Both the position numbers and the translations under genes were made by a program. From positions 1 through 49,140 of the forward strand of contig NIVC01004352.1 of NCBI GenBank assembly GCA_002269645.1: a stretch of 49,140 nucleotides of DNA. Reading direction: 5' to 3'. The notes beneath the pieces are model-generated. The model saw only the letters and a program-made list of their open reading frames with translations. It searched no databases and had not been told where the DNA came from. The stretch comes from Macrostomum lignano. Its lineage: Eukaryota. Shown in pieces: positions 13,236 to 47,120 of this stretch. How positions within the stretch are numbered: the stretch's first letter is position 1; each line of letters starts with the position of its first letter.

Positions 13236-13519
13236 CGATTTGAGAAATTGAGATTGAAAGCGATTGATTAAATATTGGTTTTTGCAACGTACACAGGTAA
13301 GGAGGGTAAGATTGAAAACAATTGATTACAACTTGGCTTTAACAACATACATAGGTATAGTAGGTAGGAGAGAGAATTATAGATTGAGATTGAAAGTTAA
13401 ACCAAATGTACACAATTCTTGTCCAGTGGTCAAAAGGCAGAATCAGGGGCGGTAGCTAGCTTAGGTAATTGAACATCAAGCTAAGTGTACACAGCGTGCA
13501 CGACTGTGTCACTCACTGT

Positions 13520-13939: not shown

Positions 13940-14109
13940 ATGGTTTAACTTTCAATCTCAATCTATAATTCTCTCTCCTACCTACTATACCTATGTATGT
14001 TGTTAAAGCCAAGTTGTAATCAATTGTTTTCAATCTTACCCTCCTTACCTGTGTACGTTGCAAAAACCAATATTTAATCAATCGCTTTCAATCTCAATTT
14101 CTCAAATCG

Positions 14110-14167
14110 TTCTAATAAAATCCTGACGATGTACCATGGCGTGCGAAACGCGTTGAAGTTGTTAGAA
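14110..14167 (+). ncRNA. Minimal type I hammerhead ribozyme in the inverted pseudo-LTR (identical copy)
   Basis: CTGACGA at 14123-14129, GAAA at 14145-14148, GTT cleavage triplet at 14152-14154. Stem I pairs 14110-14122 with 14155-14167. Confidence 0.8.
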
Positions 14168-16934
14168 ATTGAAATCATATTCAAATGTTGATATTAAGCT
14201 TTCTATATACCAGTAAGCCAATATACCGCTCAGGCTAGAATAACAGCAAATGCTACTAGAATAATAGTAAATGCTACCAGAATAACAGGATAACGAAACG
14301 ATACTTATAAGGGGGGCTAAATAGTAGGCCCTATTCTAAGAACAATATACTTAGACAAATTCTCAAATATATACTTACACAACTACTCAGATATATACTC
14401 AGAATAATTCCAAGAAACATATCTCAGACTTATTCTAAGATTAATAAACTCAAAATTTATTAATAGAATAGTCTTGGTAGCAGCTACCAACATTAAAACA
14501 TTTATAAAGATAGAAATTAAGCCATGACAACTTTGGTGAAATTGTGGAATTATTTGTAGGGACAGAAGGAAACACGCCTGTAACAACTTGGTAGCAGCTT
14601 TAGGATATTCAATACATAGGAATTAGAAAAGTAGCCCTACAACAGCTGGTTGCAACAGTGGGATAATTTCAGTGAGAGCAAACATGCCTTTTACATATGT
14701 ATGCCAAATTTTTTGAGTGTACCACCCCAGAAATTTCTAGCATAGATTATTATATGCTTTCTTCCTAACTATGGCTTGATATTAATGTGCATTTAAAAAA
14801 TTGGTTTAAAGCATTTGAATTCTGGCATGCACCTAGTAGTATAATCCATCATCCAGTCTAGACTATAGATAAAACTCCCTTTACCTTATTGAAAGTCCTT
14901 ATTTTTGAACAGTACATTGTAAAAAAATTGGCATACAATACAAGCAAATTTACTCTCAATATAAAAAACTTTAATTCAATGTCACTATGTCAGTGTAGAA
15001 AAAAAACTATAGGCCTAATTTTGATTCTAGTATACTGTATACACAACTGCTTTGATCTAGACTATGCCTAGTATGGGGCTGGCTTGGTTCATATTATTAT
15101 ATTATTCATTGACATTGGCCTATACTATAGGCTACTCCTAAGCTAAAGGTTCACAAATATATAAAACTGTTTTAATCATAATCATAACATACTAGCATTA
15201 GCCAGTTTGCCTAAGTAGTAATAGCAAGACTTGCTTGTAATGCAAGTAAAAGCAATAGTAAATTAAAGAAAAATGAAATACTACTACTATAGTACTACTA
15301 AAAGTCTATTCTAAACAGACTTGCACTTTTTATGTATGACTGAGGCTGAGCAGTGTTAGAAGCAACTTATCATAAAATTTTATGCCCCCTCCATTTCAAA
15401 ATCGTAGCTACGCCAGTTTCTTTGTCACAATTTTACGTAGTTCGTAGAAAAGTTACGCTTAAATTTCATTTACCGTGACTTTACATCAAAAAAATCATGC
15501 CGCTATATGCTTATTAAGATCAGTTAATGCGTTTCAGCTTGAAGTTGTTTTTCTAATAATGATCTGTATGCTATGCGTTGATAGAGAAGTTATTTTGTTT
15601 ATGTTTTAAAGAATTCCACGACGATGTCATAAAATGCAATTACTGCTGAGTTGATACGAAAATGAATGAGTTGCAAAGGTGTGAATCATCTGTACGTTAA
15701 TTTGAAAATTGTTTTCCGTTGACTGACCCCAGCTGTTCATGCGTGACTCCTCGCGGTGATGCTATTAAGTCGTTTATTAATTTATCACTGATAAAGTTAA
15801 AGTCCAGATTTGCATGTAACAGTAAAGTGACATGTAAATTTAACGAACGTGACAAGTTTAACCCTCCCTTTTACCCAATGATATTCTTCGCGTAGCTTCT
15901 AGATAGTGGATATGTCAATTGCAAATTTCTTCTACGACTAGATGTACTTTTTAGAATGTTTTTTTCCGAATGATGCTGAAAATATGAATTTAAATGGTAT
16001 TAAAAATAGTTGACAAATACATTTAAACAAAGCAAAACACAGTTCTGGGATTAAATTCAGCTTCTTTGGCCGAACTGGAAAAATAAAACCCCTTGTCTAA
16101 ACAAGCCTGAGAAGTTCAATTTCTTTAGAAAACAAGATAGCTCAGTTACCGCCGGTAGGTTTATTTTGACCTTAATTATTGTACTTTAAACAAATGTTAA
16201 TTGTTTTCCAACCGGACGTTAAATAGAAACAAATGCAAGTAGGAAACATATCCAAACATGCCCAAAATCTTGCCATAATAAGGAAAAATTATAACAGCAA
16301 ATGCGAACAGGGGAATAAAAGTTAAAGTTTAAACGCACCTATTAATAGAATAATAGCACCGTTACTATGCTATGCACAAGAATTGCAGACTAATTGAAAA
16401 TGCAGATACACAAATCGTCTTTACGAATATAACCAGGTCTGTCAAATAAAGAAATTAATTGGCAACAAAAGTGGGCCGACAAAAAAGACATAAATTATAC
16501 ATACTTGAGGACAATTGAAAAATTATATATAGAATTGCTCCATTTTAAAAAGCAGCAGAGAGCAGCACTGCCTACTGACCAGGCAACTGTAAAATCTGAA
16601 AATTAAATTTTAATAATTTTTGCACAATTGCAAACTTTACAATATATATTCAGCAGCGATTAAGCAGGTGTAATATAAAATTAGTTGCTTACAACATGGC
16701 AACTATGTCCATTGACTAATTTAAGCGAGCATAAGTTTACGCTGGTCAATGATTACGCAACATAGGATACAATGAAACACTGCGGACTTACAATTTCTTT
16801 GAAACATTTTCAAATGACTTTTTGCGACTCATTATTAAAATAAAGCGAAGTTCTTTGGGTTCAAGTTGTGTTTGCTGCCAAGGCAGCGAAATTACACAGG
16901 AAGAGATTCAAGGTAAAGCAGCTATGCGATTGGG

Positions 16935-17392: not shown

Positions 17393-20015
17393 TCAGAAGC
17401 TGAACCTCCTTGCGTGTCGCTGTCTCAAAGGCAGAGGCGGCGGCGGTGGTCGAGACGGCGCCAGCTTGCCGCCGCAGTTAGAAAGGTCGGAGAAGCAGCT
17501 AGCCTGGGGCTGAGCAGGGGCAGCGGCAGCCACTTCAGGCAGTGCAGGCGGATTGTTCTCCGAATTCTGACTAACCAACATCTGGTCGGCGCCGCCGTCT
17601 AGTCGATCAGTCTGACTGGCATTCTTAAACGACGAATCCGACTGTTCCTCGCTGCTAGCGGTTACCATGCCAACCAGGCCAGCCTGGGACTCGTTCGAAC
17701 TAGAAAACTCTTCCAATTGCTCGTCGCTAGCCCAAGCAATGTCGTCCACTTCGACAGATTCTTCTTCTGCAACTTCTCTCCGTTCGACATTGTCCTCTTC
17801 CTCCTCCGACATCATCGACGAAGCCGGTCGTTTCTGTCGAAAACTGCCGCCGCCACTGAACGGCGCCGCCGCCGGCATCGAAGCTCGACCGCGAGAGCGC
17901 GCGCCAAATGCGGCGGCGCCAAATGAAGAAGCGCCGGCGCCAAGCGCCCATCGAGGCACGGGGAAAAGTGTTTGACTTTGTTGCTGCGGCGGCGGCATTG
18001 GGAAGGGACTGTTGATGCCGACATTTCTAACCACAGATTCGACAACATCGGCGGCAGCAGCGTCAGCAGCGGCGTCCGCCGATTCAGCCACAGCGCCGGC
18101 GCCGGCAAAATACGGATGCCGGAGAGCCTCAGCGGCGGTGCAACGAGCCAACGGTGAGAAACGGAGCAGCCGTTCGCCAAGAAGGCTGGCCAGACTCCAT
18201 CGGCCGCCCGTGTAGCCGCAGCCGCCGTCAAGACCGCTGGCCAGACCAGTTGGCAGGCGGGCGGCTAAACAAGCGGCCACAGCCGAAGCCGGCAATTCTG
18301 GCGGAAACTCCGCGGCCAATGGTTGCCTAGCAACGGCAGATCCTGCTGGCCAAGCCGCGGCCGAGGGTACGCCTAGCAGGGCTAAGATTTGCCTAAGCAT
18401 GGGAGCCTCTTTCTGGGCATTGAATAGCGACTTGCCGTTGGCGGCCATTTCGAACAGAATGCAACCGGCGCTCCAGACGTCAGTAGGGCTGGAGTAGCCG
18501 TAGGCCAGCAGCACTTCCGGGCTGCGGTACCACAGAGTGCTGACCACTGCCGTCATCTGTGGGTTAGTAAGTTGATTCATTTGAGCGAGAGTTGATTCAA
18601 GAAATCAATGCATTAAGTTGATTGTTTAAATGTAAAACGACTTACCTGTTTCTCCCAGGAGCAAGCTCTGGCCATGTTGAAGTCGGCAATTTTGAGCACT
18701 GTGCACTGTTGATTTAGCAGACAATTCTGCGGCTTCAAATCACGATGAACGATTCGATGCCTGTGTAGAAAGTCCAGGCCGAGCATCAGCTGATGCCCAA
18801 GATTTCGAACAGCCGACTGAAATGAGTAATGCGACTGACTGCTCAAACTGGAGAGCTGGATGGAGACTGACACTGCTCAAGCTGGGGAACTTGATGGAGA
18901 CTGACACTGCTCAAACTGGAGAGCTGGATGGAGACTGACACTGCTCAAGCTGGGGAACTTGATGGAGACTGACACTGCTCAAACTGGGGAACTCGATGGA
19001 GACTGACACTGCTCAAGCTGGGGAACTTGATGAAGACTGACACTGCTCAAACTGGGGAACTTGATGGAGACTGACACTGCTCAAACTGGGGAACTTGATG
19101 GAGACTGACACTACTCAAGCTGGGGAACTTGATGGAGACTGACACTGCTCAAACTGGGGAACTCGATGGAGACTGACACTGCTCAAGCTGGGGAACTTGA
19201 TGGAGACTGACACTGCTCAAGCTGGGGAACTTGATGGAGGCTGACACTGCTCAAACTGGGGAACTTGATGGAGGCTGACACTGCTCAAACTGGGGAACTT
19301 GATGGAGACTGACACTGCTCAAACTGGGGAAGTTGATGGAGGCTGACACTGCTCAAACTGGGGAAGTTGATGGAGGCTGACACTGCTCAAACTGGGGAAC
19401 TTGATGGAGACTGACACTGCTCAAGCTGGGGAACTTGATGGAGACTGACACTGCTCAAACTGGGGAAGTTGATGGAGACTGACACTGCTCAAACTGGGGA
19501 ACTTGATGGACTGACAACTGCTTAAACTGGGGATCTTGAGGAAGAATTACTTTGGATTGACTAGGAGGATAGCTACTTAAAATACGAGTATAACTACACA
19601 AACAGGGAGCATTTCTACTCAAACAGGGAGTATGTCTACTCAAACAGGGAGCATGTCTACTCAAACAAGGAGCATGTCTACTCAAACTCACGGGTCCCAT
19701 TCGATGCCTGGACAAATAGATTTGCAAATCGCAGTGCAGCAGCTCGAACACTAGAAACAGATAATAGTCTTTGCCATGCTGCTGCAGTAACACGTCAATA
19801 AGTGCTACAATATTTTGATGACGCAATTTTGACAGCGGTTTCAATATGACCAATTCTCTCATAGTACTATAGGGCAGGCCGCTGCTATTGGACACGCGAA
19901 TCTGTTTTAGCGCAACTGGTCCATCTGGTCCGTGGCCAACTAAGACTTTGCTGTAGCTGCCTATGCCAATTTCTCGGCCAAGCACGTATCTGCAATATTG
20001 GTATGACATAAGCAT
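17393..20015 (-). CDS. CDK4/6: CDK4/6-like cyclin-dependent kinase, 3 exons, about 552 aa, long C-terminal extension
   Basis: Exons 19692-20015, 18646-18816 and 17393-18556; all GT-AG phase 0. Motifs EIGIGSYSKV, VALK, GLPYSTMRE (PISTVRE/PLSTIRE-like), HRDLKPQN, DFN, MTAVVSTLWYRSPE, DVWSAGC, HPYF. The start codon is tentative. Confidence 0.88.
18835..19530. repeat. 34-bp tandem array (CTCAAACTGGGGAACTTGATGGAGACTGACACTG)n, about 20 copies, CDK intron 1
   Basis: Unit read directly; ends about 18 nt from the acceptor at 18817. Confidence 0.96.
19598..19687. repeat. 21-bp tandem repeat (AAACAGGGAGCATGTCTACTC) x about 4, abutting the CDK intron 1 donor
   Basis: Gives the SRHAPCL repeats in the ORF track. 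Confidence 0.9.
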
Positions 20016-20058
20016 CAACTTTAATTGAAAGCATAACTTAAAAACAAACCATTGAAAA

Positions 20059-21230
20059 CGGGTAAACAGCGGGAGTAACTATGAACGTCTTATTAGATAC
20101 GAATGCTTCGTCATCTAATTAGTAGTTATCTATAAATGGAGATAAATGGACCTCTCTTACAGGTCTCAGCGCTGAGGCACTGTAAATTGTGGCGGACAAG
20201 GGGTGAGTCAAAAAAATGCCCACCCGAAGGAATACAGACGTAGTACTACTTAGATGACGAGGCATTTTAGCCCTAATATCAGTCATAGTTACTCCTGCCG
20301 TATACCCAAAATTGCGTTACTTTTTTAGGGTTTCTTTCACAGGTAAGTCGCATGGCCAGTGTAAATCAGGGGGGTTGCGCATGTATGCTCAGTGCTTGGG
20401 GGTTAGTAAAAGCAATACCTTTACTGAAACCAGTAACCATCTAGATAGAAACTATTTCCAACTCAGTCCAAGCAAAAACTCACTTGTAGATAGACTGCTG
20501 CTTCTGTTGCTGCTGCTGCAATTTCGGCTGCTCGTGCCCAGCAGTCTGTGAAGGCGAATGCAGCCTAGCTATGGCAGCAGTGGCTGCATCAACCGCAATG
20601 TCAGCAGTGCGCAAACTGTTGCTGCTGCCATGGCTGCTGCTATCACCGCTGGCAAAGGGCCAGCCAATCTGGCTGCTGTTGCTGCCTCCAGAAGAAGCCA
20701 TCGTTCAATTAGTAGCTTCAATCAGTCCAGCACTTCAGTTGCAGATCAATTTCTTGTTCAAAGAAAATCTGATTCAAAGTTTCAATGAGATGCTTTAAAT
20801 TTAGATGTTAAGTCACAATTAAATCCCCCCTGTTCAGCAAGTTAAAGGTAAAAAATGTGTTAATCATAAGAAGAAAAAATCATTCTTTTTCTAAATTTTT
20901 AAATTAAATAAGAAAAGAAACTTCAAATAAATGTGGGCCACTTTTTTTAATAATTAGCGCATTTATATTTAGCCAAAAAGGCTTTGTAATAAGTAGAGTT
21001 GACTTATTAAAACTAGACTGTTTTAAAAAGTAATAAGTAGATGATGAGGCATTTTTGCCTTTATAAGACAGTCATAGTTACTCCTACCATTTACCCAAAG
21101 CTATATTAATTTTGCTTTAGGACTTTTTTACATGTAAGTTGCATTTTTGGCCAAAAACTATGTTGAATTTTTGTTAAAACTAAGTCACACGACTGACTGA
21201 ATATTGGAGGTTGCACATGTATGCCTTAGC
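20059..21230. repeat. Three diverged copies of a dispersed repeat upstream of CDK: 20059-20125 (-), 20246-20400 (+), 21036-21230 (+)
   Basis: Shared TAGATGAYGARGCATT..CATAGTTACTCC..TACCC motif; the first two copies form an inverted pair. Confidence 0.65.
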
Positions 21231-24019: not shown

Positions 24020-24450
24020 GAGTAGGGTAAGATTCTGACAGATGTGGGGTGAGATTCTGAGGGAAATGGGGTGAGATAATGAGAGACTTGGGGTGAGATT
24101 TTAAGAGAAGTGGGGTGAGATTATAAGGGAAATGGGGTGAGATTCCAAGAGAAGTAGGGTGAGATAATAAGGGAGTGGAGTGAGATTCTCAAAAAATGGG
24201 GAGGGATTCTGATAGATGTGGGATGAGATTCCAAGAGAAGTAGGGTGATATTCTAAGGGAAGTGGAGTGAGATTCTGATGGATGTAGGGTGAGATTCTGA
24301 GGGAACTGGGGTGAGATTATGAGAGAAGTGGGGTGAGAATATGAGGTAACTGGGGTGAGATTATGAGAGAAGTGGGGTGAGATTCTGAGGTAACTGGGGT
24401 GAGATTATGAGAAAAGTGGGGTGAGAATCTGAGGGAAGTGGGGTGAGATA
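24020..24450. repeat. Degenerate tandem array, about 22-bp unit (GGGGTGAGATTCTGAGGGAAGT-like), about 19 copies, 3' of the KDM3 stop codon
   Basis: Recurrent GGGGTGAGAT core at about 22-nt spacing. Confidence 0.88.
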
Positions 24451-24610
24451 CGGGCTTTTGGTTGTGACGCCCAACGGCTCAAAGTCAGCACGGTTAAAAA
24501 TCAAATGGTTAATCATTCTGAAACAATAAAATTGTTTAAAGTCACAATATCGTCACCATCTCTCACGATAAATAAGCTTTAGTGGTCGCAAGCGCACAGG
24601 TGAGGCCGGG

Positions 24611-27600
24611 TCACTCAAGGCTGGAAATGCAGAGGCGAACCCGCTGGAACAGGCTCATCTCCAGGCAGTCGTCGTGCGCTAGCACGCCCGTCCAATTGCT
24701 GGCCAGGCACTGCGCCATGGACTCTGCGCTGCTGAAATCCGTCTGAGCCTGGGTGCCCGTCATCTCGAAGCGGAACTGCGGGACAGAATGGGTTTGAAGA
24801 GGTGTGATATCGATTAGGATAAACTCAGTATCCTTAGAGAGGGGAGGGGGTTGTACTAGGCTAGAGAGTCGGACTCACGACTGAAAGGTCGGGGGTTCGA
24901 TTCACGACCCACTTCGAACAAGTCCATGAGCAAGACACTGAACTCTGCATTGCTTCAGTTCACCCAGCTGTAAAATGGGTGCCAGCATTAGCTGGGGTAA
25001 TTGAAGGTGTGTGTGGCGACCAGTGTTGGGCAAGTTACTCAAAAAAAGTAACTTGCGTTACTGTAACTTAAGTTACCACTTTTTAAAAAGTAACTTACGT
25101 TAGCCTAGTAACTTTGAACAAAAACCCGGTAACTTTTAAGTTACTTCCGTTACTTACTTCCGTTACCTATGTTATTAACAAAATTTTCTGCTTTTTTTAA
25201 CATTGCAAATGTGATGGAACAGCACAAATGATCGCGAAAGCCAGGAGGAAGAATACAACAACATTAATTTCAGTAACTGTATTAAATTTTAATCACTTTA
25301 GGCCCTTTCCGTAAAAAGAAGAGAAGCTGAAGGTCAGAAACGTTAAAGGCAAAACGCAATTTAATTTTTAATAACATTATAAGTTATAATACACAAGGAC
25401 AACTTAACGTAACTTCAGTTGTCCTTGATAATACATCGCTCGTAATAAGTATCTGGCTTTACTCCACTCTACAGTCTGCTTTACTAGTATTTTTATTTAT
25501 TTTCAATTATTATCATTAATATTAAATTATTGTGCAGTGCAGTGCAGTGCCAGTGGACTTTAGTGGTGTAGCCAGGGAGGCCGCCTTAACAATCGTTGGG
25601 GCGGCAACTTCACCCCACCTGCAAGACACCCCACCTGGGGGGGTGGGGTTGGGCGTGGCGGGTACCAAAAACCATGAGGCGATTTGAGTGCCTGCGGCGC
25701 TTAAATGAGTGCCTGCGGCGCTTAAATAAGTGCTTGCGGCGCTAAAATGAGTGCCTGCGGCGCTAAAAGTGGCAATAACATGAGGCATGGCCAGCCAGGC
25801 CAACCCGCCCCCCCCCCAATTAAAATTCCTGGCTACGTCGATCACTGAGTGGATTTGTGGAGACTACAGATGAATTTCTTTCTTTGGTTGTTTGTTTCTA
25901 AGAACTAAACAAAATATTTTTATTAACTTAAAAACAAAAAGCAAAAATATTTTACCGAAAATAACAAAGTAAAAACATGTTTCAAGTATTTCTTTATTAA
26001 TTACAGCGTAATACCGTATGATATTATTCACTTAGTTTTGAATTTAGGAATGAAAAATGCTAAAAATGTGACAACTGGCGTAATAGCTAAGCATATCAGT
26101 TTTAAATTTAAATATTGCGATTGTTGCAAAGTAACTGTAACGGACTTCCGAAATTTGAGTAACTTACCGTTACTCCGTTACCAAAATAGGAAAGTAACTT
26201 GCGTAAGGAACGCTTTACGAAAAAGTAACTTGCGTTACCATTTACAAGTTACTCGGTAACGGAAGTGCCCAACACTGGTGGCGACCCCCCCCGGCCCCCA
26301 GTCCTTGGACTGAACAGCCGTACGCAGCCTTCAGATGCGCGGCGCAATAGCTGCGGCTGTGCTATCGGTTGCACATCTGCCCAATCAATCAATATCCTTG
26401 AATATGCATCTCCGCTCCATCAGTATCCGCGAGTCTGCATCTGCTACCCCCAGTCACCCCAGCAAAAGAAACTACATGGACGAACCTGAAAGGCGCATCC
26501 CGCAGGCAGCAGCACCGCCTCGCCGCAGCGCTGGCGCAGCACAATTGGCGGCGGCTGCAGCGGAGCTACGCCAGCCAGTCGAGTCAGACTTAAGTCGTCC
26601 AGATATCTGAATAGTATGAAGGGGGGGGGGTTAACGGTGAGCAGAATGGCTCATAATAGGTCAAATTGGTGAATCAGATCCATGTCAAGTTACAGGTGTT
26701 AGGTCTCTAAATCAAGCTATGATCCAGTGTTAGGTCTCTAAATCAAGCTATGATCAAGTGTCAGGTCCCTAAATCAAGCTATGATCAAGTGTCAGGTCCC
26801 TAAATCAAGCTATGATCAAGTGTCAGGTCCCTAAATCAAGCTATGATCAAGTGTTAGGTCCCTAAATCAAGCTATGACAGGTGTCAGGTGTCAGGTCCCT
26901 AAATATCAAGCAATTAGAGGTGTCAGGTCCCTAAATCGGGCTATGACCGGTGTCAGGTTCCTAATTATCAAGCAATTAAAAGTTTCAGGTTCCTAAATAT
27001 CAAGCAATCACAGGTGTCAGGTCCCTAAATCGGGCTATGACAGGCGTCAGGTCCCTAAATCTAGCTATGACAGGCGTTAGGTCCCTAAATCTAGCTAAAT
27101 TATGACCGGTGTCAGGTTCCTAATTATCAAGCAATCACAGTTGTCAGGTCCCTAATTATCAAGCAATCACAGGTGTCAGGTTCCTAAATATCAAGCAATT
27201 GCAGGTGTCAGGTTCCTAAATATCAAGCAATCACAGGTGTCAGGTCCCTAAATCGGGCTATGACAGTTGTCAGGTTCCTAATTATCAAGCAATCACAGTT
27301 GTCAGGTCCCTAAATCTAGCTAAATTATGACCGGTGTCAGGTCCCTAAATATCAAGCAATCACAGGTGCAAGGTCCCTAAATCAAGCAATCACAGGTGTC
27401 AGGTCCCTGAATATCAAGCAATCACAAGTGTCAGGTCCCTAATTATCAAGCAAATAAAGGTGTCAGGTCCCTAAATATCAAGCAATCACAGGTGCCAGGT
27501 CCCTAAATCAAGCAATCACAGGTGCCAGGTCCCTAAATCAAGCAATCACAGGTGCCAGGTCCCTAAATCAAGCAATCACAGGTGCCAGGTCCCTAAATCA

Positions 27601-30600
27601 AGCAATCACAGGTGTCAGGTCCCTAAATGAAGCGAAGTCAGAGACGATAGGTCGTACCTGACAGTCTGCAGCTCCAACTGGTATATTTGTTCATTGAGCT
27701 GGCGCAGTGACTCGCTATGGAACACGTGCCACACAGCTGCAACTGGCTGGTCATCCGAGACGCTCGAGGCTGACGGAGGCAGCAGGGCCAGACTGACAAT
27801 GTCGCGGGAGGCGATGCGCAGATAGCAGTCGCTTCCGCGGTGCCCACTAACCAATCTGGAGGCTGTTTGAAACTTGCGCAAAGCCATGTTGAAGCAGCCA
27901 TGCGGACTGGGCAGATGTCGGTGGTGGTTGGCGGGTGGTAGCATGGGTACTTTGTTTATGAAGCCATTAATTTAGATGGGCCACTTATCTCTGCAAGGTT
28001 TTCTATCCACTCCCTTAGTAAAGGTACTAATACTGAAGCTACCAATTCATAAATCCGACGGGGTCAATCGGGGTCATAAAGCTACTGGGGTCAGTCAGGG
28101 TCATAAAGCTACTGGGGTCAGTCGGGGTCATAAAGCTACTGGGGTCAGTCGGGGTCATAAAGCTACTTAAGCAGTCGGTCATTAACCTACTGGACCCCTA
28201 GCAACCAACCTGATATAATCGGGCACCAGCTGTTTCAGCAGGGCTTCAGCGTCGCTCGGCGCTGGCCACTGTATCAGTCGCAGCCTGGCGGCTGTGCCGG
28301 CCTCCTCATTAGAGCTGTAGCACCAGAAAGTGGTCTCGGCTGTCTGGCCAGTAGGTGGAGTCACGGGCGCGCCGCTGATGCAGTCGATCAGAGCGGAGTT
28401 GAAACACTGGCGAGGCTGGCTGCTGGCGCTGCTGTTTGGGAGACACAGCGACTCCCCACTGCTGTTGGCGGTACATAGTGCCAGCAATATTATAGTTCAA
28501 GTTTAGTCGGCTAATTTCTAATCCCCTCTCCCTGTGCACTCCCTCTTCCCCTCTCCCTGTGCACTCTCTCTTGCCCTCTCTCCTTGTTCACCCCCTCTTC
28601 CCCTCTCTCCCTGTGCACCCCTCTTCCCCTCTCCCTGTGCACTCCCTCTTCCCCTCTCCCTGTGCACTCTCTCTTGCCCTCTCTCCTTGTTCACCCCCTC
28701 TTCCCCTCTCTCCCTGTGCACCCCTCTTCCCCTCTCCCTGTGCACTCCCTCTTCCCCTCTCCCTGTGCACTCCCTCTTCCCCTCTCCCTGTGCACTCTCT
28801 CTTGCCCTCTCTCCTTGTTCACCCCCTCTTCCCCTCTCTCCCTGTGCACCCCTCTTCCCCTCTCCCTGTGCACTCCCTCTTCCCCTCTCCCTGTGCACTC
28901 CCTCTTCCCCTCTCCCTGTGCACTCCCTCTTCCCCTCTCCCTGTGCACTCCCTCTTCCCCTCTCCCTGTGCACTCCCTCTTCCCCTCTCCCTGTGCACTC
29001 CCTCTTCCCCTCTCCCTGTGCACTCCCTCTTCCCCTCTCCCTGTGCACTCCCTCTTCCCCTCTCCCTGTGCACCCCTCTTCCCCTCTCCCTGTGCACTCC
29101 CTCTTCCCCTCTCCCTGTGCACTCCCTCTTCCCCTCTCCCTGTGCACTCCCTCTTCCCCTCTCCCTGTGCACTCCCTCTTCCCCTCTCCCTGTGCACTCC
29201 CTCTTCCCCTCTCCCTGTGCACTCCCTCTTCCCCTCTCCCTGTGCACTCCCTCTTCCCCTCTCCCTGTGCACTCCCTCTTCCCCTCTCCCTGTGCACTCC
29301 CTCTTCCCCTCTCCCTGTGCACCCCTCTTCCCCTCTCCCTGTGCACCCCTCTTCCCCTCTCTCCCTGTGCACCCCTCTTCTCCTCTCTCCCTCTGTGCAC
29401 CACCTCTTCCCCTCTCCCTGTGCACCCCCTCTTCCCCTCTCTCCCTGTGCACCCCTCTTCCCCTCTCTCCCTGAGCACCCCTCTTCTCTCTCCCTGAGCA
29501 CCCCTCTTCTCTCTCCCTGTGCACCCCTCTTCTCATCTCTCCCTCTGTGCACCACCTCTTCCCCTCTCCCTGTGCACTCCCTCTTCCCCTCTCCCTGTGC
29601 ACCCCTCTTCTCTCTCCCTGAGCACCCCTCTTCTCTCTCCCTGTGCACCCCTCTTCTCATCTCTCCCTCTGTGCACCACCTCTTCCCCTCTCCCTGTGCA
29701 CTCCCTCTTCCCCTCTCCCTGTGCACTCCCTCTTCCCCTCTCCCTGTGCACCCCTCTTCCCCTCTCCCTGACCCTGTGCACTCCCTCTTCCCCTCTCCCT
29801 GTGCACCCCCTCTTCCCCTCTCTCCCTGTGCACCCCTCTTCCCCTCTCTCCCTGTGCACCCCTCTTCTCCTCTCTCCCTCTGTGCACCACCTCTTCCCCT
29901 CTCCCTGTGCACTCCCTCTTCCCCTCTCCCTGTGCACTCCCTCTTCCCCTCTCCCTGTGCACTCCCTCTTCCCCTCTCCCTGAGCACTCCCTCTTCTTCG
30001 ATCTCCCTGTGCACTCCCTCTTCCTCTCTCCCTGTGCACTCCCTCTTGCCTTCTCCCTGTGCACTCCCTCTTCCCCTCTCCCTGTGCACTCCCTCTTCCC
30101 CTCTCCCTGTGCACTCTCTCTTCCCCTCTATCTGTGCACTCCCTCTTCCCCTCTCCCTGTGCACCCCCTCTTCCCCTCTCCCTGTGCACTCTCTCTTCCC
30201 CTCTATCTGTGCACTCCCTCTTCCCCTCTCCCTGTGCACCCCTCTTCCCCTCTCCCTGTGCACTCCCTCTTCCCCTCTCCCTGTGCACTCCCTCTTCCCC
30301 TCTCCCTGTGCACTCCCTCTTCCCCTCTCCCTGAGCACTCCCTCTTCTTCGATCTCCCTGTGCACTCCCTCTTCCTCTCTCCCTGTGCACTCCCTCTTGC
30401 CTTCTCCCTGTGCACTCCCTCTTCCCCTCTCCCTGTGCACTCCCTCTTCCCCTCTCCCTGTGCACTCTCTCTTCCCCTCTATCTGTGCACTCCCTCTTCC
30501 CCTCTCCCTGTGCACCCCCTCTTCCCCTCTCCCTGTGCACTCTCTCTTCCCCTCTATCTGTGCACTCCCTCTTCCCCTCTCCCTGTGCACCCCCTCTTCC

Positions 30601-33600
30601 CCTCTCCCTGTGCACTCCCTCTTCCCCTCTCCCTGTGCACTCTCTCTTCCCCTCTATCTGTGCACTCCCTCTTCCCCTCTCCCTGTGCACCCCCTCTTCC
30701 CCTCTCCCTGTGCACTCCCTCTTCCCCTGTCCCTTCAGGTGTATCTGCTCTTTATATATTTGTACCAGTTAATAAAGTACGAGATGTCCCTCTTTTACTT
30801 ACTCGGCACCGCTGTTCGCAGGCTTCAGGCATCCTGTTAGCACAATCGGCAGCCGCTTAATCCAACGAGTTTGAAAGTCGGCAAGCGAGGCTAAAGGCAC
30901 GGACAATCGCACAGCGCAATCCCCAGGCTTGCTGCTGTCAACATTGCCAGCTTCATCAGTGGCCCCCGGGTCGGAATGAGGATTTTTAGCCACCAGATCC
31001 TCTGCTAACTGATCGGCAGCTCGAGCCAGATTAGCCAGATAGTCCGGCCGCATAAGGCAAACTGGTTTCATGCGGTCTGGGCAGTGCCGCCAAGAGGGGC
31101 AGTCCTCGCTGAATTGCTGCTGCTGCTGAGGCTGCTGGTCGGGATAGTTAGCTAGGGAATTTGAGCACGTCAGACAGAGACTGTAGCCGCATTCTAGGCA
31201 GGCCAGGTGCATGCTAAATATTGGGCTGCCGCATCTGGTGCACTGCTCCTCAGGTGGGATTTGATTGACCGGCGGCTCCGGCTCCAGGCAGCGGGACCTG
31301 GATCATGGCGAATTCAAATAGGGATATTATCGATGTGATTTCAGATAGGGATATTATCGATGGGATTTCAGATTGGGATATTATCGATGGGATTTCAGAT
31401 AGGGATATTATCGATGGATTTCAGATAGGGATATTATCGATGGGATTTCAAATAGGGATATTATCGATGGGATTTCAGATAGGGATATTATCGATGGGAT
31501 TTCAGATAGGGATATTATCGATGGGATTTCAGATAGGAATATTATCGATGGGATTTCAGATAGGGATATTATCGATGGGATTTCAGATAGGGATATTATC
31601 GATGTGATTTCAGATAGGGATATTATCGATGGGATTTCAGATAGGGATATTATCGATGGGATTTCAGATAGGGATATTATCGATGGGATTTCAAATAGGG
31701 ATATTATCGATGGGATTTCAAATAGGGATATTATCTATGTGATTTTAGATAGGGATATTATCGATTGGATTTCAGATTGGGATTTTTGATGAGGATTCTT
31801 GATTGGGATGATTAAAGTGACATTTCAGCTTTTAGATTATGAAATGGGATTTGAATTATGAAACATTCAGCAATTTTTAGTTAATTTTCCATAAACAAAA
31901 TCACAGACTCACAAATCGGTCATCGGCTGCCGCCTCTGTTGTTTCTTTTTCCTACGCCAGAGCAGCTGGTTCAGGTCGCTGCCGGCCCAGCGAGCTACCG
32001 CGGCCGATTCTCGTTGAAGCAGCTGGTGCAGCGGCGGCAGAAGCAGCGTCAACTGCTTGGCAGCCACGTCTCGGTGCAACTTGTGCTGCGGCGATGAGGT
32101 TGCAGCGGCGGCGGTGGCTGCTGAGGATGTTGCCGTCGGCGGGGCCGGTTCGACTCGCCAGTCAGCCGTGTCAGCTGGTGTCACATCGCCTAGGGAGCAG
32201 AAACCCGCCACCGTGAGCACGCCTTGGCATAGGCGCAGCCTGGATAAGTTATAGTCATAATGTACTTTATAGGGATTCTGGATTCTTAATGAAGTCAGAT
32301 GGCGATTCTCAATGGGATCAATGGCGATTCTCAATGGGATCAGTGGCGATTCTCAATGGGATCAGTGGCGATTCTCAATGGGATGGGATCAGGGGCGATT
32401 CTCAATGGGATCAATGGCGATTCTCAATGGGATCAGTGGCGATTCTCAATGGGATCAGTGGCGATTCTCAATGGGATCAGGGGCGATTCTCAATGAGATC
32501 AGGGGCGATTCTCAATGGGATCAATCGCGATTCTGAATGGGATCAGTGGCGATTCTCAATGGGATCAGTGACGATTCTCAATGGGATCAATGGCGATTCT
32601 CAATGGGATCAGTGACGATTCTCAATGGGATCAATGGCGATTCTCAATGGGATCAATGGCGATTCTCAATGGGATCAGTGGCGATTCTCAATGGGATCAG
32701 TGGCGATTCTCAATGGGATCAGTGGCGATTCTCAATGGGATCAGTGGCGATTCTCAATGGGATGGGATCAGGGGCGATTCTCAATGGGATCAGTGGCGAT
32801 TCTCAATGGGATCAGTGGCGATTCTCAATGGGATCAATGGCGATTCTCAATGGGATCAATGGCGATTCTCAATGAGATCAATAGCGATTCTCAATGGGAT
32901 CAGTGGCGATTCTCAATGGGATCAGGGGCGATTCTCAATGAGATCAGGGGCGATTCTCAATGGGATCAATGGCGATTCTCAATGGGATCAGTGGCGATTC
33001 TCAATGGGATCAGTGACGATTCTCAATGGGATCAATGGCGATTCTCAATGGGATCAGTGACGATTCTCAATGGGATCAATGGCGATTCTCAATGGGATCA
33101 ATGGCGATTCTCAATGGGATCAGTGACGATTCTCAATGGGATCAGGGGCGATTCTCAATGAGATCAGGGGCGATTCTCAGTGGGATCAATGGCGATTCTC
33201 AATGGGATCAGGGGCGATTCTCAATGGGATCAGTGGCGATTCTCAATGGGATCAATGGCGATTCTCAATGGGATCAGGGGCGATTCTCAATGAGATCAGG
33301 GGCGATTCTCAATGGGATCAATGGCGATTCTCAATGGGATCAGTGGCGATTCTCAATGGGATCAGGGGCGATTCTCAATGGGATCAGTGGCGATTCTCAA
33401 TGGGATCAGTGGCGATTCTCAATGAGATCAGGGGCGATTCTCAATGGGATCAGTGGCGATTCTCAATGGGATCAGGGGCGATTCTCAATTGGGAAATTAA
33501 AAGATTCTCCAAGCACAAAAGTAGAGCTGCACTGCTTGGGTGCATTTAATCGAGCTCACTTTCTAAACTCCTTGAACCGGCAGCTGGGCTGGGCCACCGG

Positions 33601-36600
33601 AGGCGTGGCTATCAGCCGGCAGTCTCTACACAGGGGCAGCCGAGTGTAGACCAGCTCCCGGCAGGTGTTGCCCTGCAGAGCTACGAGAGTCTGGCTGGCA
33701 TCCGCCTGACCTTCTGTTGATCTGCTGCTCTCTGTTGGCAGGTGGGGACGGGCGAGAGGATTTTACATTTTACAGGTATACAATTGTGGTTTATTCATTT
33801 ATCCTATAGGGAGATTAAGATAAATATTTTTTATTATTGGGGTTTTTTAATTTTCTGGATTTTGTGGAGATTTTTTACCGTCAGCGCCGCTCATGGCAGT
33901 TGCAGTCGACAAGCTCAACCGTCTCTTAGCCGTGTTAGCAACCGATGCTAACGATAGCAGGGTCTCGCCATCCGACGCCCTCCCAGCTGATGCCTCTTTA
34001 GGCCTCGTTGCCGTCAGTGCTGAGGCCGCGGCGGCAGTCTTGGATGATCGTAACATTGTAGGTAGAGTGATCGACTGCCGCTTTCTGGATGCCTGCGTCG
34101 TGTTTGTGTTAATCATGCGATGCAGTCAATTATGTATAATAGACTGTTTACATCTGTTCAGTGACTTCATCAACATTCTCAAGTAGTCTGAGGATTTCAC
34201 CTATTCTGTTATTAGACGAAGCCTTTACCCATATCTGATATCCACATCTTAGGTGTGGGCGTTTGACACTTCAGCTACTCTGATAGCTGAGTCTTTATGC
34301 ACATACACATTCCCAGGTGGGCTAATGACACTTTTACAGCTACTCTAATAGCTGAGTCTTTATACACATTCCCAGGTGGGCTAATGACACTTTTACAGCT
34401 ACTCTAATAGCTGAGTCTTTATACACATTCCCAGGTGGGCTAATGACACTTTTACAGCTACTCTAATAGCTGAGTCTTTATACACATTCTCAGGTGGGCT
34501 AATGACACTTTTACAGCTACTCTAATAGCTGAGTCTTTATACACATTCCCAGGTGGGCTAATGACACTTTTACAGCTACTCTAATAGCTGAGTCTTTATA
34601 CACATTCCCAGGTGGGCTAATGACACTTTTACAGCTACTCTAATAGCTGAGTCTTTATACACATTCTCAGGTGGGCTAATGACACTTTTACAGCTACTCT
34701 AATAGCTGAGTCTTTATACACATTCTCAGGTGGGCTAATGACACTTTTACAGCTACTCTAATAGCTGAGTCTTTATACACATTCCCAGGTGGGCTAATGA
34801 CACTTTTACAGCTACTCTAATAGCTGAGTCTTTATACACATTCCCAGGTGGGCTAATGACACTTTTACAGCTACTCTAATAGCTGAGTCTTTATACACAT
34901 TCTCAGGTGGGCTAATGACACTTTTACAGCTACTCTAATAGCTGAGTCTTTATACACATTCTCAGGTGGGCTAATGACACTTTTACAGCTACTCTAATAG
35001 CTGAGTCTTTATACACATTCCCAGGTGGGCTAATGACACTTTTACAGCTACTCTAATAGCTGAGTCTTTATACACATTCCCAGGTGGGCTAATGACACTT
35101 TTACAGCTACTCTAATAGCTGAGTCTTTATACACATTCTCAGGTGGGCTAATGACACTTTTACAGCTACTCTAATAGCTGAGTCTTTATACACATTCCCA
35201 GGTGGGCTAATGACACTTTTACAGCTACTCTAATAGCTGAGTCTTTATACACATTCTCAGGTGGGCTAATGACACTTTTACAGCTACTCTAATAGCTGAG
35301 TCTTTATACACATTCTCAGGTGGGCTAATGACACTTTTACAGCTACTCTAATAGCTGAGTCTTTATACACATTCCCAGGTGGGCTAATGACACTTTTACA
35401 GCTACTCTAATAGCTGAGTCTTTATACACATTCCCAGGTGGGCTAATGACACTTTTACAGCTACTCTAATAGCTGAGTCTTTATACACATTCCCAGGTGG
35501 GCTAATGACACTTTTACAGCTACTCTAATAGCTGAGTCTTTATACACATTCCCAGGTGGGCTAATAAGACTTCAGCTACTCTAATAGCTGAGTCTTTATA
35601 CACATTCCCAGGTGGGCTAATGACACTTTTACAGCTACTCTAATAGCTGAGTCTTTATACACATTCCCAGGTGGGCTAATGACACTTTTACAGCTACTCT
35701 AATAGCTGAGTCTTTATACACATTCCCAGGTGGGCTAATAAGACTTCAGCTACTCTAATAGCTGAGTCTTTATACACATTCCCAGGTGGGCTAATAAGAC
35801 TTCAACTACTCCAATGGCCAAGTCTTTATCTACAAGAGCAGAGCGGAGAGCTTAGAAGAGACAAATATTGAGCGAGCCAGATTGCTATTGTAAAGTTTCA
35901 AAGGATCAGGGAGGCTTTGCTGGCCGCAGGTCATCTACCTGCCTATACTTTTTTGTGTAATTAAAGTGTTGAACGATTTTAGAGATTTTTAGGTATGCAG
36001 TAAGGTAGTATAAATTAATTAATTACTAACTCACCTTTGCTGTCGGCCTGGAGTTCCCAGCTGTCGCCGCCGCTGTACCTGAACTGTTCGATTCTGACTC
36101 ATCAATGTTAGCCTGCTTCTGTTTGGGCAAATTCCGCATAATAGGAGGCTGCATCGGTGGCGGCATTTGCTTTTTCTCCATCTGTTGCTCAGCCCACTTG
36201 TGCAACCAGGCCTTCTTGACAGCCATTGACGAACTGGCTTCGGTCGCTGCTGGCTCCGAATTACTTGGCTGCTTCTGCTGTCTTCCCGATGCTGGGGAGC
36301 TGCTGAGGACAGTGAATGAGGGGCAGATAAGGGGCGGATGAGGGTGGGGAGCTGCTGAGGACAGTGAATGAGGGGGCGGATAAGGGGCGGATGAGGGTGG
36401 GGAGCTGCTGAGGACAGTGAATGAGGGGGGCGGATAAGGGGCGGATGAGGGTGGGGAGCTGCTGAGGACAGTGAATGAGGGGGGCGGATAAGGGGCGGAT
36501 GAGGGTGGGGAGCTGCTGAGGACAGTGAATGAGGGGCAGATAAGGGGCGGATGAGGGTGGGGAGCTGCTGAGGACAGTGAATGAGGGGGCGGATAAGGGG

Positions 36601-38285
36601 CGGATGAGGGTGGGGAGCTGCTGAGGACAGTGAATGAGGGGGCGGATAAGGGGCGGATGAGGGTGGGGAGCTGCTGAGGACAGTGAATGAAGGGGCGGAT
36701 AAGGGGCGGATGAGGGTGGGGAGCTGCTGAGGACAGTGAATGGGGGGCGGATAAGGGGCGGATGAGGGTGGGGAGCTGCTGAGGACAGTGAATGAGGGGG
36801 GCGAATAAGGGGCGGATGAGGGTGGGGAGCTGCTGAGGACAGTGAATGAGGGGGACGGATAAGGGGCGGATGAGGGTGGGGAGCTGCTGAGGACAGTGAA
36901 TGAGGGGGGCGGATAAGGGGCGGATGAGGGTGGGGAGCTGCTGAGGACAGTGAATGAGGGGGACGGATAAGGGGCGGATGAGGGTGGGGAGCTGCTGAGG
37001 ACAGTGAATGAGGGGGCGGATAAGGGGCGGATGAGGGTGGGGAGCTGCTGAGGACAGTGACTGAGGGGCGGATGAGGGTGGGGAGCTGCTGAGGACAGTG
37101 ACTGAGGGGCGGATAAGGGGCGGATGAGGGTGGGGAGCTGCTGAGGACAGTGAATGGGGGCGGATAAGGGGCGGATGAGGGTGGGGAGCTGCTGAGGACA
37201 GTGAATGGGGGGCGGATAAGGGGCGGATGAGGGTGGGGAGCTGCTGAGGACAGTGAATAGGGGTGGATGAGGAGCGGATGAGGGGCGGATGAGGGGGAGC
37301 TGCTGATGACAGCGAATTGGGGGCGGATAAGGCCGAGGGGTGGATGTGGGTGGGGAGCTGCTGAGTACAGTGAAGTGAATGGAGGGGCAGATGAAGGTGG
37401 GGAGCTGCTGAGGACAGTGAATAAGGAAGTGGACAAAGACATTATTAAAAAAATGACAAAAGCAACACAGTTAAACTCACCATTGCGACAGCGAAGCTTT
37501 CTGAGCCGAGGAAGACAATCCTGTTGTCAAAGCGATATTAGTAACAGTGGCAACAGAGCTAGTAGTGCTGCTGCTGGCATTACACTTGCTAGCAATTCTA
37601 AGATCCAACGGTTCCACAGCTGTCATGGCGCTTATTGTTGCTCTACGATTACCGCCCGGTCTCAACTGGTCTTGATTCAGTCGCCTGGCCGCGCGCAGAG
37701 GCGGCTTGCCGCCAGCAGCCGATTTTGCTGAGGCCGACATTGGCAAACTGCTCCTGCCAGAGGGAGCGGCGAAACGACTCTGCTGGCCCAACTGCTGGGG
37801 AGGACAATGGCGATATTGATAATGGGCACAGCTGCCTGTTGCGTTTGCGGATAATAAACTGGCTGAGCGGGCGGGATCAGTACAGGCCGGATTGTAGGAC
37901 TGATGGCCGGGCTAACTGGATGATGCTGATTAATAATAGGCATTGGTATTGGCATTGGATAGTTATGGGAGTAATAATGCTGCCAATCGTGCCAATAGGA
38001 GTGCCATTTGTGCTGCAGAGATGGCCGAGGCGAAAATTGCGGCGGTTGAAGATGCGGCGGATAAAGCTGGTGCTGCTGCTGCGGATGTTGATTCGGATGG
38101 TGCACACAGTGCTGCTGAGGACGGTGAACTGCTATTGCTTGTTGTGTATGTGGACTAGCAGTAGCAGCGTGAGAGCTTGAAGTTGAGACTGGTTGTGGCT
38201 GCAAGGAGCGACGAGAATACGCGGTGAAAGCTGATCCACCGTGCGGCTGCGGCAGCATGTTAACGTTGTTATTATTGTTGTCCAT
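24611..38285 (-). CDS. KDM3: KDM3/JMJD1-family JmjC protein with C6 zinc finger; iron ligands lost
   Basis: Phase-consistent GT-AG exons 24611-24775, 26486-26606, 27658-27906, 28210-28461, 30803-31297, 31913-32239, 33560-33731, 33879-34092 and 36035-36302. The 5' exon 37481-38285 has a frame break. Family motifs LCRDCR..CRFKEFRK, GVLTVAGF, CTRCGSPIFSMHLACLECGYSLCLTC, FQTRWIKRLPIVLTG, QWP, PDYISPHGCFNMA, AVWHVF, YLD, GEAVLLPAG, TDFSSAE, HDDCL. Confidence 0.88.
25021..26277. mobile_element. Non-autonomous hAT-type DNA transposon (1257 bp including a nested insert)
   Basis: 12-bp perfect TIR CAGTGTTGGGCA. 8-bp TSD GTGGCGAC at 25013-25020 and 26278-26285. Dense subterminal GTAAC/GTTAC motifs at both ends. 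No transposase ORF. Confidence 0.92.
25561..25847. mobile_element. GC-rich MITE nested in the hAT element
   Basis: Ends TAGTGGTGTAGCCAGG / CCTGGCTACGTCGATCACTG; flanks AGTGGACT(T) and AGTGGATT(T) resemble a degraded TSD; internal 24-bp repeats. Confidence 0.6.
26690..27627. repeat. Composite 30-33-bp tandem array (core GGTGTCAGGTCCCTAAAT), KDM3 intron
   Basis: 31-bp GCTATGATCAA-type units at the left, 30-bp GCAATCACA-type units at the right, mixed in between. Confidence 0.93.
28059..28167. repeat. 27-bp tandem repeat (GGGGTCAGTCGGGGTCATAAAGCTACT) x4, KDM3 intron
   Basis: Unit read directly. Confidence 0.92.
28522..30735. repeat. 25-bp polypyrimidine tandem array (CCCTGTGCACTCCCTCTTCCCCTCT)n, about 85-90 copies, KDM3 intron
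   Basis: Unit read directly; it is the source of the 690-aa and 768-aa spurious ORFs. Confidence 0.97.
31312..31790. repeat. 27-bp tandem array (GATGGGATTTCAGATAGGGATATTATC)n, about 17 copies, KDM3 intron
   Basis: Unit read directly; ends about 14 nt from the acceptor at 31298. Confidence 0.96.
32298..33490. repeat. 22-bp tandem array (GATTCTCAATGGGATCA-[ATGGC/GTGGC/GGGGC/GTGAC])n, about 54 copies, KDM3 intron
   Basis: 17-nt constant block plus a 5-nt variable slot. Confidence 0.97.
34265..35815. repeat. 59-bp tandem array, about 26 copies, KDM3 intron
   Basis: Unit ACTTTTACAGCTACTCTAATAGCTGAGTCTTTATACACATTCYCAGGTGGGCTAATGAC, shifting 1 nt per 60-nt line. Edge units are diverged. Confidence 0.97.
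36292..37422. repeat. About 53-bp G-rich tandem array, about 22 copies, KDM3 first intron; the unit contains a 3' splice site on the gene strand
   Basis: GAGCTGCTGAGGACAGTGA was counted about 22 times; the minus strand reads CTCATTCACTGTCCTCAG|CAGCTCCCC. Confidence 0.95.

Positions 38286-43790: not shown

Positions 43791-47120
<3,330 letters not shown>

What the first reader, a model, noticed from the sequence alone, without database searches (positions are those of the whole stretch)
26486..27906. KDM3-family protein has lost all three JmjC iron ligands: a candidate pseudo-demethylase
Seen: the family motif GTTNLHLDVSDAV aligns to GSDCYLRIASRDIV (H to R, D to A; codons 27810-27818), and FIPAGAPHQ aligns to LLPAGCAFQ (H to F; 26489-26491). 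The JmjC is also shortened, yet the C6 zinc finger and nine phase-consistent exons are intact. Established: KDM3 needs H-x-D...H for Fe(II); Arabidopsis JMJ24 is a catalytically dead KDM3 relative with other functions. Inference: a retained non-catalytic chromatin scaffold; the EPLDLR motif near the N-terminus resembles a CtBP-binding PxDLS site.
Basis: partly seen in the sequence, partly recalled or inferred. Interest (0 to 1): 0.72.

Follow-up and report, generated by a model that had tools for sequence, protein, structure and literature searches.

The report
Degenerate KDM3-like gene without iron ligands
An animal gene related to the KDM3 histone demethylases keeps its zinc finger and an intact nine-exon reading frame, but its catalytic domain has lost all three iron-binding residues, so it is probably a non-enzymatic relative, a kind of protein already known from other demethylase families.

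Summary
A nine-exon, GT-AG, 755-codon gene lies on the minus strand (37740..24611). It encodes a KDM3-type C2HC4 zinc finger and a C-terminal JmjC-like domain.

Homology to KDM3 is weak but real:
- BLASTP against human KDM3B gives E=8e-8, collinear over the whole domain.
- A profile of 63 KDM3-family proteins scores it 28 bits (best of 2000 shuffles 4.3).
- hhalign gives 97.7% probability.
- One intron position and phase is shared with bird KDM3B.

BLASTP, MAFFT and hhalign all place Arg (27816-27818), Ala (27810-27812) and Phe (26489-26491) on the His-x-Asp...His iron triad.

The ligand loss is part of a general decay of the domain. It is 21.5% identical to KDM3B, against 42-64% for other family members. 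It is about 65 residues shorter, two conserved loops are deleted, and Pfam's JmjC model does not detect it.

The frame has no internal stop (32 and 36 in the other frames), and coding potential is positive only in the model frame. A retained non-catalytic protein is therefore more likely than a dead pseudogene.

No orthologue, transcript or source organism could be found, so selection and function remain untested. The CtBP motif is only a lead. This is a new member of a known kind (JmjC pseudo-enzymes) and of moderate interest.

The parts
37481..37740 (-). Exon 1 of the model (ATG at 37740; MSASAK...EPLDLR...). The 5' end is uncertain: a 202-codon Q/H/P-rich ORF starting at ATG 38285 overlaps it in another frame.
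37597..37614 (-). Weak statistical support.
36035..36299 (-). Exon 2 (low-complexity, A/S/K/Q-rich)
33879..34092 (-). Exon 3 (low-complexity, A/S/T-rich)
31913..32189 (-). Exon 4. It contains LHQLL (an LxxLL motif, 32017-32031) and a basic run RRKKKQQRR.
30803..31297 (-). Exon 5: the zinc finger plus the start of the JmjC-like domain (FQTRWIKRLPIVLTG on FRECWKQGQPVLVSG)
31165..31242 (-). C2HC4 zinc finger CTRCGSPIFSMHLACLECGYSLCLTC, with the same Cys/His spacing as rotifer, spider and tick KDM3 proteins
28210..28431 (-). Exon 6 (RLRLIQWPAPSD...LVPDYI on VLKLKDWPPGED...LPLPEY)
27658..27906 (-). Exon 7: the strand that should carry HxD, followed by AAVWHVF on GALWHIY
27810..27818 (-). Codons Arg-Ile-Ala at the family's His-x-Asp/Glu iron-ligand positions
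26486..26606 (-). Exon 8 (YLDD...GEAVLLPAGCAFQ on YLDQ...GDAVFIPAGAPHQ). It ends with a phase-0 intron at the same place as in bird KDM3B.
26489..26491 (-). Codon Phe at the position of the third iron ligand (second His)
24611..24775 (-). Exon 9 (FRFEMTGTQAQTDFSSAESMAQCLA on [25 protein letters not shown]), with stop TGA at 24611-24613

Best explanation
This is a real, very fast-evolving member or offshoot of the animal KDM3/JHDM2 family. It keeps the family's C2HC4 zinc finger and the overall JmjC fold signature. It has replaced all three Fe(II) ligands (His>Arg, Asp>Ala, His>Phe) and the conserved Thr residues before the first His. It has also deleted two conserved loops (FVRPDLGP and DPIHDQ).

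Shown: the homology, the substitutions, the intact spliced reading frame, and coding-type composition in that frame.

Inferred: without the metal site it cannot act as a 2-oxoglutarate oxygenase. If expressed, it therefore works non-enzymatically. The most likely mode uses the zinc finger plus the degenerate JmjC barrel as a binding or dimerisation module. In KDM3A these same two domains are needed for homodimer formation. The roughly 340-residue low-complexity N-terminus would carry short docking motifs. A plausible action is as a partner or competitor of a catalytic KDM3 at H3K9-methylated chromatin.
For: - BLASTP against human KDM3B gives one collinear alignment over 246 of 290 residues, E=8e-8.
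- A family HMM built without this sequence scores it 28.1 bits, against at most 4.3 bits for 2000 shuffles.
- hhalign gives probability 97.7%, E=2.2e-12, over 241 columns.
- The zinc-finger spacing is identical to six family members and appeared in 0 of 20000 shuffles. ZF HSPs to rotifer and spider KDM3 have E about 1e-4.
- The phase-0 intron directly after PAGxxxQ is shared with bird KDM3B.
- The ligand mapping is the same in three methods.
- There is no alternative exon with HxD anywhere in the window.
- The model frame has 0 internal stops, against 32 and 36 in the other frames; shuffles of the ZF-JmjC part average 12.9 stops and none of 2000 had zero.
- All eight introns are GT-AG.
- A codon table trained on neighbouring genes scores positive only in the model frame, in each of the five C-terminal exons; the introns score negative.
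- 26 of 69 near-invariant family positions are kept, mostly fold residues such as WP, G.FN.A, WH, PAG..Q and DF.S.E.
- Precedents and the dimer requirement come from PMC7280979, PMC3034028, PMC11241480 and PMC4743055.
Against: - No transcript evidence is available.
- No orthologue or paralogue was found in 5.8 billion clustered proteins or in JGI metagenomes. A full HMMER scan of 1.84 billion representatives, run with the zinc-finger exon only, also found none. Purifying selection is therefore untested.
- The domain is so degenerate that Pfam JmjC does not see it, and loss of the ligands is not enriched over loss of other conserved residues. This pattern would also fit relaxed constraint.
- The 5' end is unresolved.
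- No structure prediction could be made, because the tool refuses spliced sequences.
- Any statement about binding partners is inference.
Confidence: 0.6

Rival explanations
1. It is an unprocessed pseudogene or a decaying duplicate of a canonical KDM3 gene. On this view it is no longer expressed or no longer under selection, and it has not yet acquired a stop or frameshift.
For: - Extreme divergence: 21.5% identity to KDM3B, against 46% for a rotifer and 59% for a spider.
- Pfam gives no hit.
- Conserved loops are deleted and only 38% of near-invariant positions are kept.
- No orthologue and no matching protein in any database.
- Nearly every intron is filled with minisatellites.
- The start of the gene is ambiguous, with two overlapping frames.
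Against: At this level of divergence a neutrally drifting copy should hold about 13 stops in the ZF-JmjC part alone. There are none, and the other two frames hold 17-18. All splice sites are canonical and the phases are consistent. The codon-usage signal is present in the model frame in all five C-terminal exons. All seven zinc-ligand residues of the finger are kept. Minisatellites also fill the introns of the neighbouring CDK4/6-like gene, so they are a feature of the genome and not of this gene.
Confidence: 0.25
2. The protein is still an oxygenase or metal enzyme that uses different residues, or a different register, for metal binding. The apparent ligand loss would then be an alignment artefact in a very divergent sequence.
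For: Per-column confidence of the hhalign alignment is low around the HxD strand. The family HMM in local mode aligns only the flanks and not that strand. A GHRGSD segment lies six residues upstream.
Against: BLASTP, MAFFT and hhalign agree on the register. Shifting the His of GHRGSD onto the family His puts Gly at the acid position and destroys the match of the next strand. The third ligand lies in the unambiguous PAGCAFQ/PAGAPHQ match found by every method. No His, Asp or Glu lies within 3 residues of any of the three sites.
Confidence: 0.04
3. The gene model is wrong where it matters. A canonical catalytic exon would exist but was missed, or the substitutions would reflect assembly error.
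For: The model is purely ab initio. The introns are long and repeat-rich, which is where assemblies often collapse.
Against: tblastn of KDM3B, JMJD1C, rotifer and spider KDM3 and the family consensus against the whole window hits only the model's exons. It finds no other HxD-bearing or PAGxxHQ-bearing stretch. The changes are spread over the whole domain, not confined to three codons. His>Phe needs two base changes.
Confidence: 0.05

Closest known systems
Animal KDM3/JHDM2 H3K9me1/2 demethylases (KDM3A, KDM3B, JMJD1C; invertebrate JHDM2)
   Same: C2HC4 zinc finger with identical Cys/His spacing. A C-terminal JmjC domain that is collinear from FxxxWxxxxP to DFxSxE. A phase-0 intron after PAGxxxQ. 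A short ZF-to-JmjC spacer like that of the rotifer protein P0050. Family architecture as described in PMC7280979.
   Different: All three Fe(II) ligands and the GTT motif are replaced. The domain is about 65 residues shorter and lacks the FVRPDLGP and DPIHDQ loops. It is 21.5% identical to KDM3B, where other members are 42-64%. Pfam PF02373 does not detect it.
Arabidopsis JMJ24 (KDM3/JHDM2 clade)
   Same: A KDM3-clade protein with an atypical JmjC domain of unclear demethylase activity that acts by another mechanism (PMC4743055).
   Different: JMJ24 works through a plant-specific RING finger, as an E3 ligase for CMT3. No RING domain was found here. The lineages differ (plant versus metazoan), so this would be an independent event.
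JARID2 (and UTY): JmjC proteins with conserved substitutions of catalytic residues
   Same: A JmjC fold retained without the catalytic residues, with function exerted through other regions (PMC3034028, PMC11241480).
   Different: JARID2 belongs to the KDM5-related JmjN/ARID group, is conserved across animals and has known partners (PRC2). Here neither conservation nor partners are known.
Hairless (KDM3D)
   Same: A divergent KDM3 member with the zinc finger and JmjC that acts largely as a transcriptional co-regulator. A bird HAIR sequence in the family set has Ala at the first His position.
   Different: It is a vertebrate gene, 42% identical to KDM3B in the JmjC. Mammalian HR is reported to be active on H3K9 (cited in PMC7280979). 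It does not lose all three ligands.

Membership tests
KDM3/JHDM2 family (by descent) | C2HC4 zinc finger with the family spacing, upstream of the JmjC | tested here: met
   The regex C..C.{7}H..C..C.{4}C..C matches at aa 358-383 and in six family members. It appeared in 0 of 20000 shuffles. phmmer and tblastn ZF alignments to rotifer and spider KDM3 agree.
KDM3/JHDM2 family (by descent) | C-terminal JmjC domain homologous to KDM3 JmjC | tested here: met
   BLASTP E=8e-8. Family HMM 28.1 bits against at most 4.3 bits for shuffles. hhalign 97.7%. Caveat: Pfam PF02373 does not reach even E<=10, and PDB phmmer gives only E=0.25.
KDM3/JHDM2 family (by descent) | Shared gene structure with canonical members | tested here: inconclusive
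   One of the four introns in the JmjC region coincides in position and phase with bird KDM3B, after PAGxxxQ. The other three do not coincide. About 0.03 coincidences are expected by chance.
KDM3/JHDM2 family (by descent) | LXXLL nuclear-receptor motif | tested here: inconclusive
   LHQLL is present at aa 300-304, but upstream of the zinc finger. An LxxLL occurs in 54% of shuffles.
Active JmjC 2OG/Fe(II) demethylase | HxD/E...H iron-binding triad | tested here: not met
   Arg, Ala and Phe occupy the three positions in BLASTP, MAFFT and hhalign. The triad is present in nearly all of the 105 family proteins.
Active JmjC 2OG/Fe(II) demethylase | 2-oxoglutarate contact residues (Thr/Phe before the first His, and Lys) | tested here: inconclusive
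   GTTNLH is replaced by SDCYLR (T152>D, T153>C). The family's Lys position could not be fixed without a structure.
Active JmjC 2OG/Fe(II) demethylase | H3K9me1/2 demethylation in vitro | not testable with these tools
   Needs recombinant protein.
JmjC pseudo-enzyme (JARID2-type) | Catalytic substitutions conserved among orthologues under purifying selection | not testable with these tools
   No orthologue found. The source organism is unknown.
Pseudogene | Disabling lesions (stops, frameshifts, broken splice sites) | tested here: not met
   No internal stop in 755 codons and all introns GT-AG. The only irregularity is the overlapping upstream ORF at the 5' end.
CtBP-binding proteins | PxDLS-type motif in a disordered region that binds CtBP | not testable with these tools
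   PLDLR is present. P.DL[SRTK] occurs in 7.6% of shuffles and PLDL in 2.8%. Binding is untested.

The most novel reading that the evidence does not exclude
A lineage-restricted, rapidly evolving KDM3 offshoot has been converted into a non-catalytic regulator. It might be a dominant-negative heterodimer partner of the catalytic KDM3, or a reader or competitor at H3K9-methylated chromatin. Its unusually fast evolution would then reflect an arms race, for example with the repeats and mobile elements that crowd this genome. It would be the first animal KDM3-clade pseudo-demethylase, arising independently of plant JMJ24.
Probability: 0.12. Interest if true: 0.6.

Novelty: new member of a known kind. 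Interest (0 to 1): 0.35.

Why it matters
JmjC proteins that have lost catalysis (JARID2, UTY, Epe1 and JMJ24-like proteins) have shown that demethylase folds are reused as scaffolds. In the papers read here, the only KDM3-clade example was plant JMJ24 (PMC4743055); a review of non-catalytic KDM functions does not mention KDM3 at all (PMC11241480).

If expressed and conserved, this gene would give a natural separation-of-function allele of the KDM3 zinc-finger/JmjC module. It would let one ask what that module does without catalysis, for example dimerisation or substrate channelling.

As it stands this is a single, un-annotated, orphan sequence from an unidentified animal genome, so the immediate value is modest.

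Tried and rejected
- Pfam on the spliced C-terminal 418 aa gave only sub-threshold zinc-finger hits and no JmjC. Pfam on the N-terminal half found nothing.
- Two word-indexed searches of 5.8 billion proteins gave no hit, even at E<=1. One used ZF+JmjC and one used the JmjC part without the poly-Q.
- A full HMMER scan of 1.84 billion representatives could only take a contiguous exon. The ZF exon gave three marginal hits that are not KDM3 proteins; one is a repeated Cys-rich finger protein.
- A JGI metagenome scan found no relative.
- An exact look-up of the neighbouring kinase ORF found it not on record.
- Rfam and tRNA scans of the window found nothing that could hint at the taxon.
- Structure prediction and the representative search both refuse spliced proteins. 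I did not try to get round this, so there is no structural check of the metal site.
- hmmalign returned only the best local domain and was uninformative for the HxD strand; hhalign was used instead.
- An intron joining the upstream MDNNNNN ORF to exon 1 was sought. There are 92 stop-free GT..AG combinations but none with a convincing donor, so this stays unresolved.
- The HRJD 'JmjC-only' genes of regenerative animals were considered. They are KDM8-related and lack a zinc finger, so they are not relevant (PMC6390904).
- A register using the His of GHRGSD as the first ligand was rejected: it leaves Gly at the acid position and breaks the match of the following strand.


Full report
**What is at the coordinates**

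The window is eukaryotic DNA of about 45% G+C, crowded with minisatellite arrays. The finding spans two exons and the intron between them, in a gene on the minus strand.
- Exon 27906..27658 translates to SPHGCFNMALRKFQTASRLVSGHRGSDCYLRIASRDIVSLALLPPSASSVSDDQPVAAVWHVFHSESLRQLNEQIYQLELQTV.
- Exon 26606..26486 translates to (R)YLDDLSLTRLAGVAPLQPPPIVLRQRCGEAVLLPAGCAFQ.
- The 1051-nt intron between the two exons is almost entirely a 32/62-nt minisatellite (26692-27633).

**Gene model**

Joining open frames at GT-AG sites gives nine phase-consistent exons:
- 37740-37481, 36299-36035, 34092-33879, 32189-31913, 31297-30803
- 28431-28210, 27906-27658, 26606-26486, 24775-24611

Together they encode 755 residues. 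Support for the model:
- The model frame has no internal stop. The other two frames have 32 and 36.
- For the ZF-JmjC part, shuffles average 12.9 stops, and none of 2000 had zero.
- A codon table trained on neighbouring genes in the window scores positive only in the model frame, in each of the five C-terminal exons. Introns score negative. In that output the true frame is the column labelled +2, because of a one-base offset at the first exon.
- tblastn of KDM3 proteins against the whole window hits only these exons. No hidden exon with a canonical HxD or PAGxxHQ motif exists in the window.

The 5' end is not settled. A 202-codon Q/H/P-rich ORF starting at ATG 38285 overlaps exon 1 in another frame, and no convincing short intron joins the two.

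**Is it a KDM3 relative?**

Single-sequence evidence is weak:
- Pfam finds no JmjC, even at E<=10.
- phmmer against PDB sequences gives JMJD1C as the best hit, but at E=0.25, in three collinear blocks.

Targeted tests are clear:
- The human KDM3B JmjC sequence was verified as identical to PDB 6rbj. It aligns by BLASTP in one collinear HSP covering 246 of 290 residues, at 22% identity and E=8e-8.
- I collected 105 KDM3-family proteins and built an HMM from the 63 that cover the domain, leaving this sequence out. It scores 28.1 bits (E=4.8e-11 for one sequence). The best of 2000 shuffles scored 4.3 bits.
- hhalign of the same profile gives 97.7% probability and E=2.2e-12 over 241 columns.
- The zinc finger CTRCGSPIFSMHLACLECGYSLCLTC has exactly the C2HC4 spacing of rotifer, spider and tick KDM3 proteins. 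That spacing appeared in 0 of 20000 shuffles.
- The ZF-to-JmjC spacing resembles the rotifer protein's.
- The phase-0 intron directly after PAGCAFQ is at the same position and phase as the intron after PAGAPHQ in bird KDM3B. The other three introns in the domain are not shared.

The family architecture of C2HC4 finger, LXXLL motif and C-terminal JmjC is described in PMC7280979.

**The metal site**

BLASTP, MAFFT and hhalign all put Arg on the first His, Ala on the Asp/Glu and Phe on the second His.
- The second His lies in an unambiguous PAGxxxQ match that every method recovers.
- The HxD strand has low column confidence. The next strand (RDIVSLALL on SDAVNVMVYV) fixes the register.
- The alternative of using the His of GHRGSD leaves Gly at the acid position.
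- The conserved GTT before the His is SDC here.

Among the 105 family proteins, the triad is HxD/E..H in all but a few of those covering both sites. The exceptions each show a substitution at only one or two of the ligand positions.

**The whole domain is degenerate, not just the ligands**
- Identity to KDM3B is 21.5%. A rotifer is 46%, a spider 59%, two unnamed metagenome-derived proteins 63-64%, and bird Hairless 42%.
- The domain is about 65 residues shorter. The FVRPDLGP and DPIHDQ loops are deleted.
- Only 26 of 69 positions that are at least 93% conserved in the family are kept. Those kept are largely fold residues: WP, G.FN.A, WH, PAG..Q and DF.S.E.
- With 38% retention, losing all the ligand positions is roughly what chance would give. 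The ligands were not singled out.

**Interpretation**

The intact frame, canonical splice sites, in-frame coding signal and complete zinc finger argue that the gene has been kept as a protein-coding gene through a very long divergence. The best explanation is therefore a non-catalytic KDM3 derivative.

How it works is inference. In KDM3A the zinc finger and JmjC are together required for homodimer formation (PMC7280979). The retained module may therefore serve in binding or dimerisation. The low-complexity N-terminal half may carry docking motifs.

The two motifs in that half have weak support:
- PLDLR is a lead only. P.DL[SRTK] occurs in 7.6% of shuffles.
- LHQLL is at chance level. An LxxLL occurs in 54% of shuffles.

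The main rival is a decaying duplicate. It cannot be excluded, because there is no orthologue in any collection, no transcript evidence and no source organism. The gene's downstream neighbour is a CDK4/6-like kinase, which points to a metazoan.

**Comparison with what is known**

Non-catalytic JmjC proteins are established:
- JARID2 and UTY (PMC3034028, PMC11241480).
- Within the KDM3 clade, plant JMJ24, which has an atypical JmjC and acts as a RING E3 ligase (PMC4743055).

This gene would be an independent animal case without a RING domain. That makes it a new member of a known kind and of moderate interest.

A structural check of the metal site was not possible.

Noticed in passing
window 24021-37426 (for example 26692-27633, 28522-30734, 31305-31783, 32281-33494, 34272-35802, 36293-37426) and throughout the window: Every intron of the gene carries a minisatellite array (periods 22-62 nt, up to 87 copies; the 59-nt array is 97-99% identical between copies). 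At least 18 such arrays occur in 49 kb, including in introns of the neighbouring genes. This looks like a genome-wide trait and could help identify the taxon.
   Followed up: partly
window 13136-14209: A 273-nt inverted repeat (13136-13408 and 13937-14209, 99% complementary) flanks a 143-codon ORF with a weak GIY-YIG nuclease match (13523-13951, minus strand; Pfam E=5e-4). This is probably a mobile element.
   Followed up: no
window 17396-20704 (-): The downstream neighbour is a CDK4/6-like kinase (PDB CDK6 E=9e-54). It has a long Ala/Ser-rich C-terminal extension and a 34-nt minisatellite in its intron (about 18700-19650).
   Followed up: partly
window 2999-3306 (-), 7962-8237 (-), 43794-47192 (-): Other neighbours are an Arf-family GTPase exon, a UBL3-like ubiquitin-fold exon (Rad60-SLD_2) and several PDZ-domain exons. 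All lie on the same strand as the KDM3-like gene.
   Followed up: partly
window 37680-38285 (-): A 202-codon Q/H/P-rich ORF starting MDNNNNNVNM overlaps exon 1 of the model in another frame. It could be a longer N-terminus joined by an unrecognised intron, a 1-nt assembly error, or an upstream ORF.
   Followed up: partly
P0094, P0048, P0022 (family hits): Ligand substitutions at single positions exist in other KDM3-family entries. A bird 'HAIR demethylase' reads NLAVEAAD (first His replaced by Ala). One JMJD1C-like sequence has PAGAMFQ, and another has PAGTLRQ. These could be real or could be prediction or assembly errors.
   Followed up: no
P0001 (hit): A 273-aa metagenomic protein made of three or more tandem Cys-rich fingers (C-x2-C-x9-H-x-R-C-x2-C-x-[YF]D-x-C-x-[ST]-C) followed by a Q/G/M-rich repeat tail. 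It was the best full-database match of the zinc-finger exon (E=1e-4). It resembles the KDM3 finger in pattern only.
   Followed up: no
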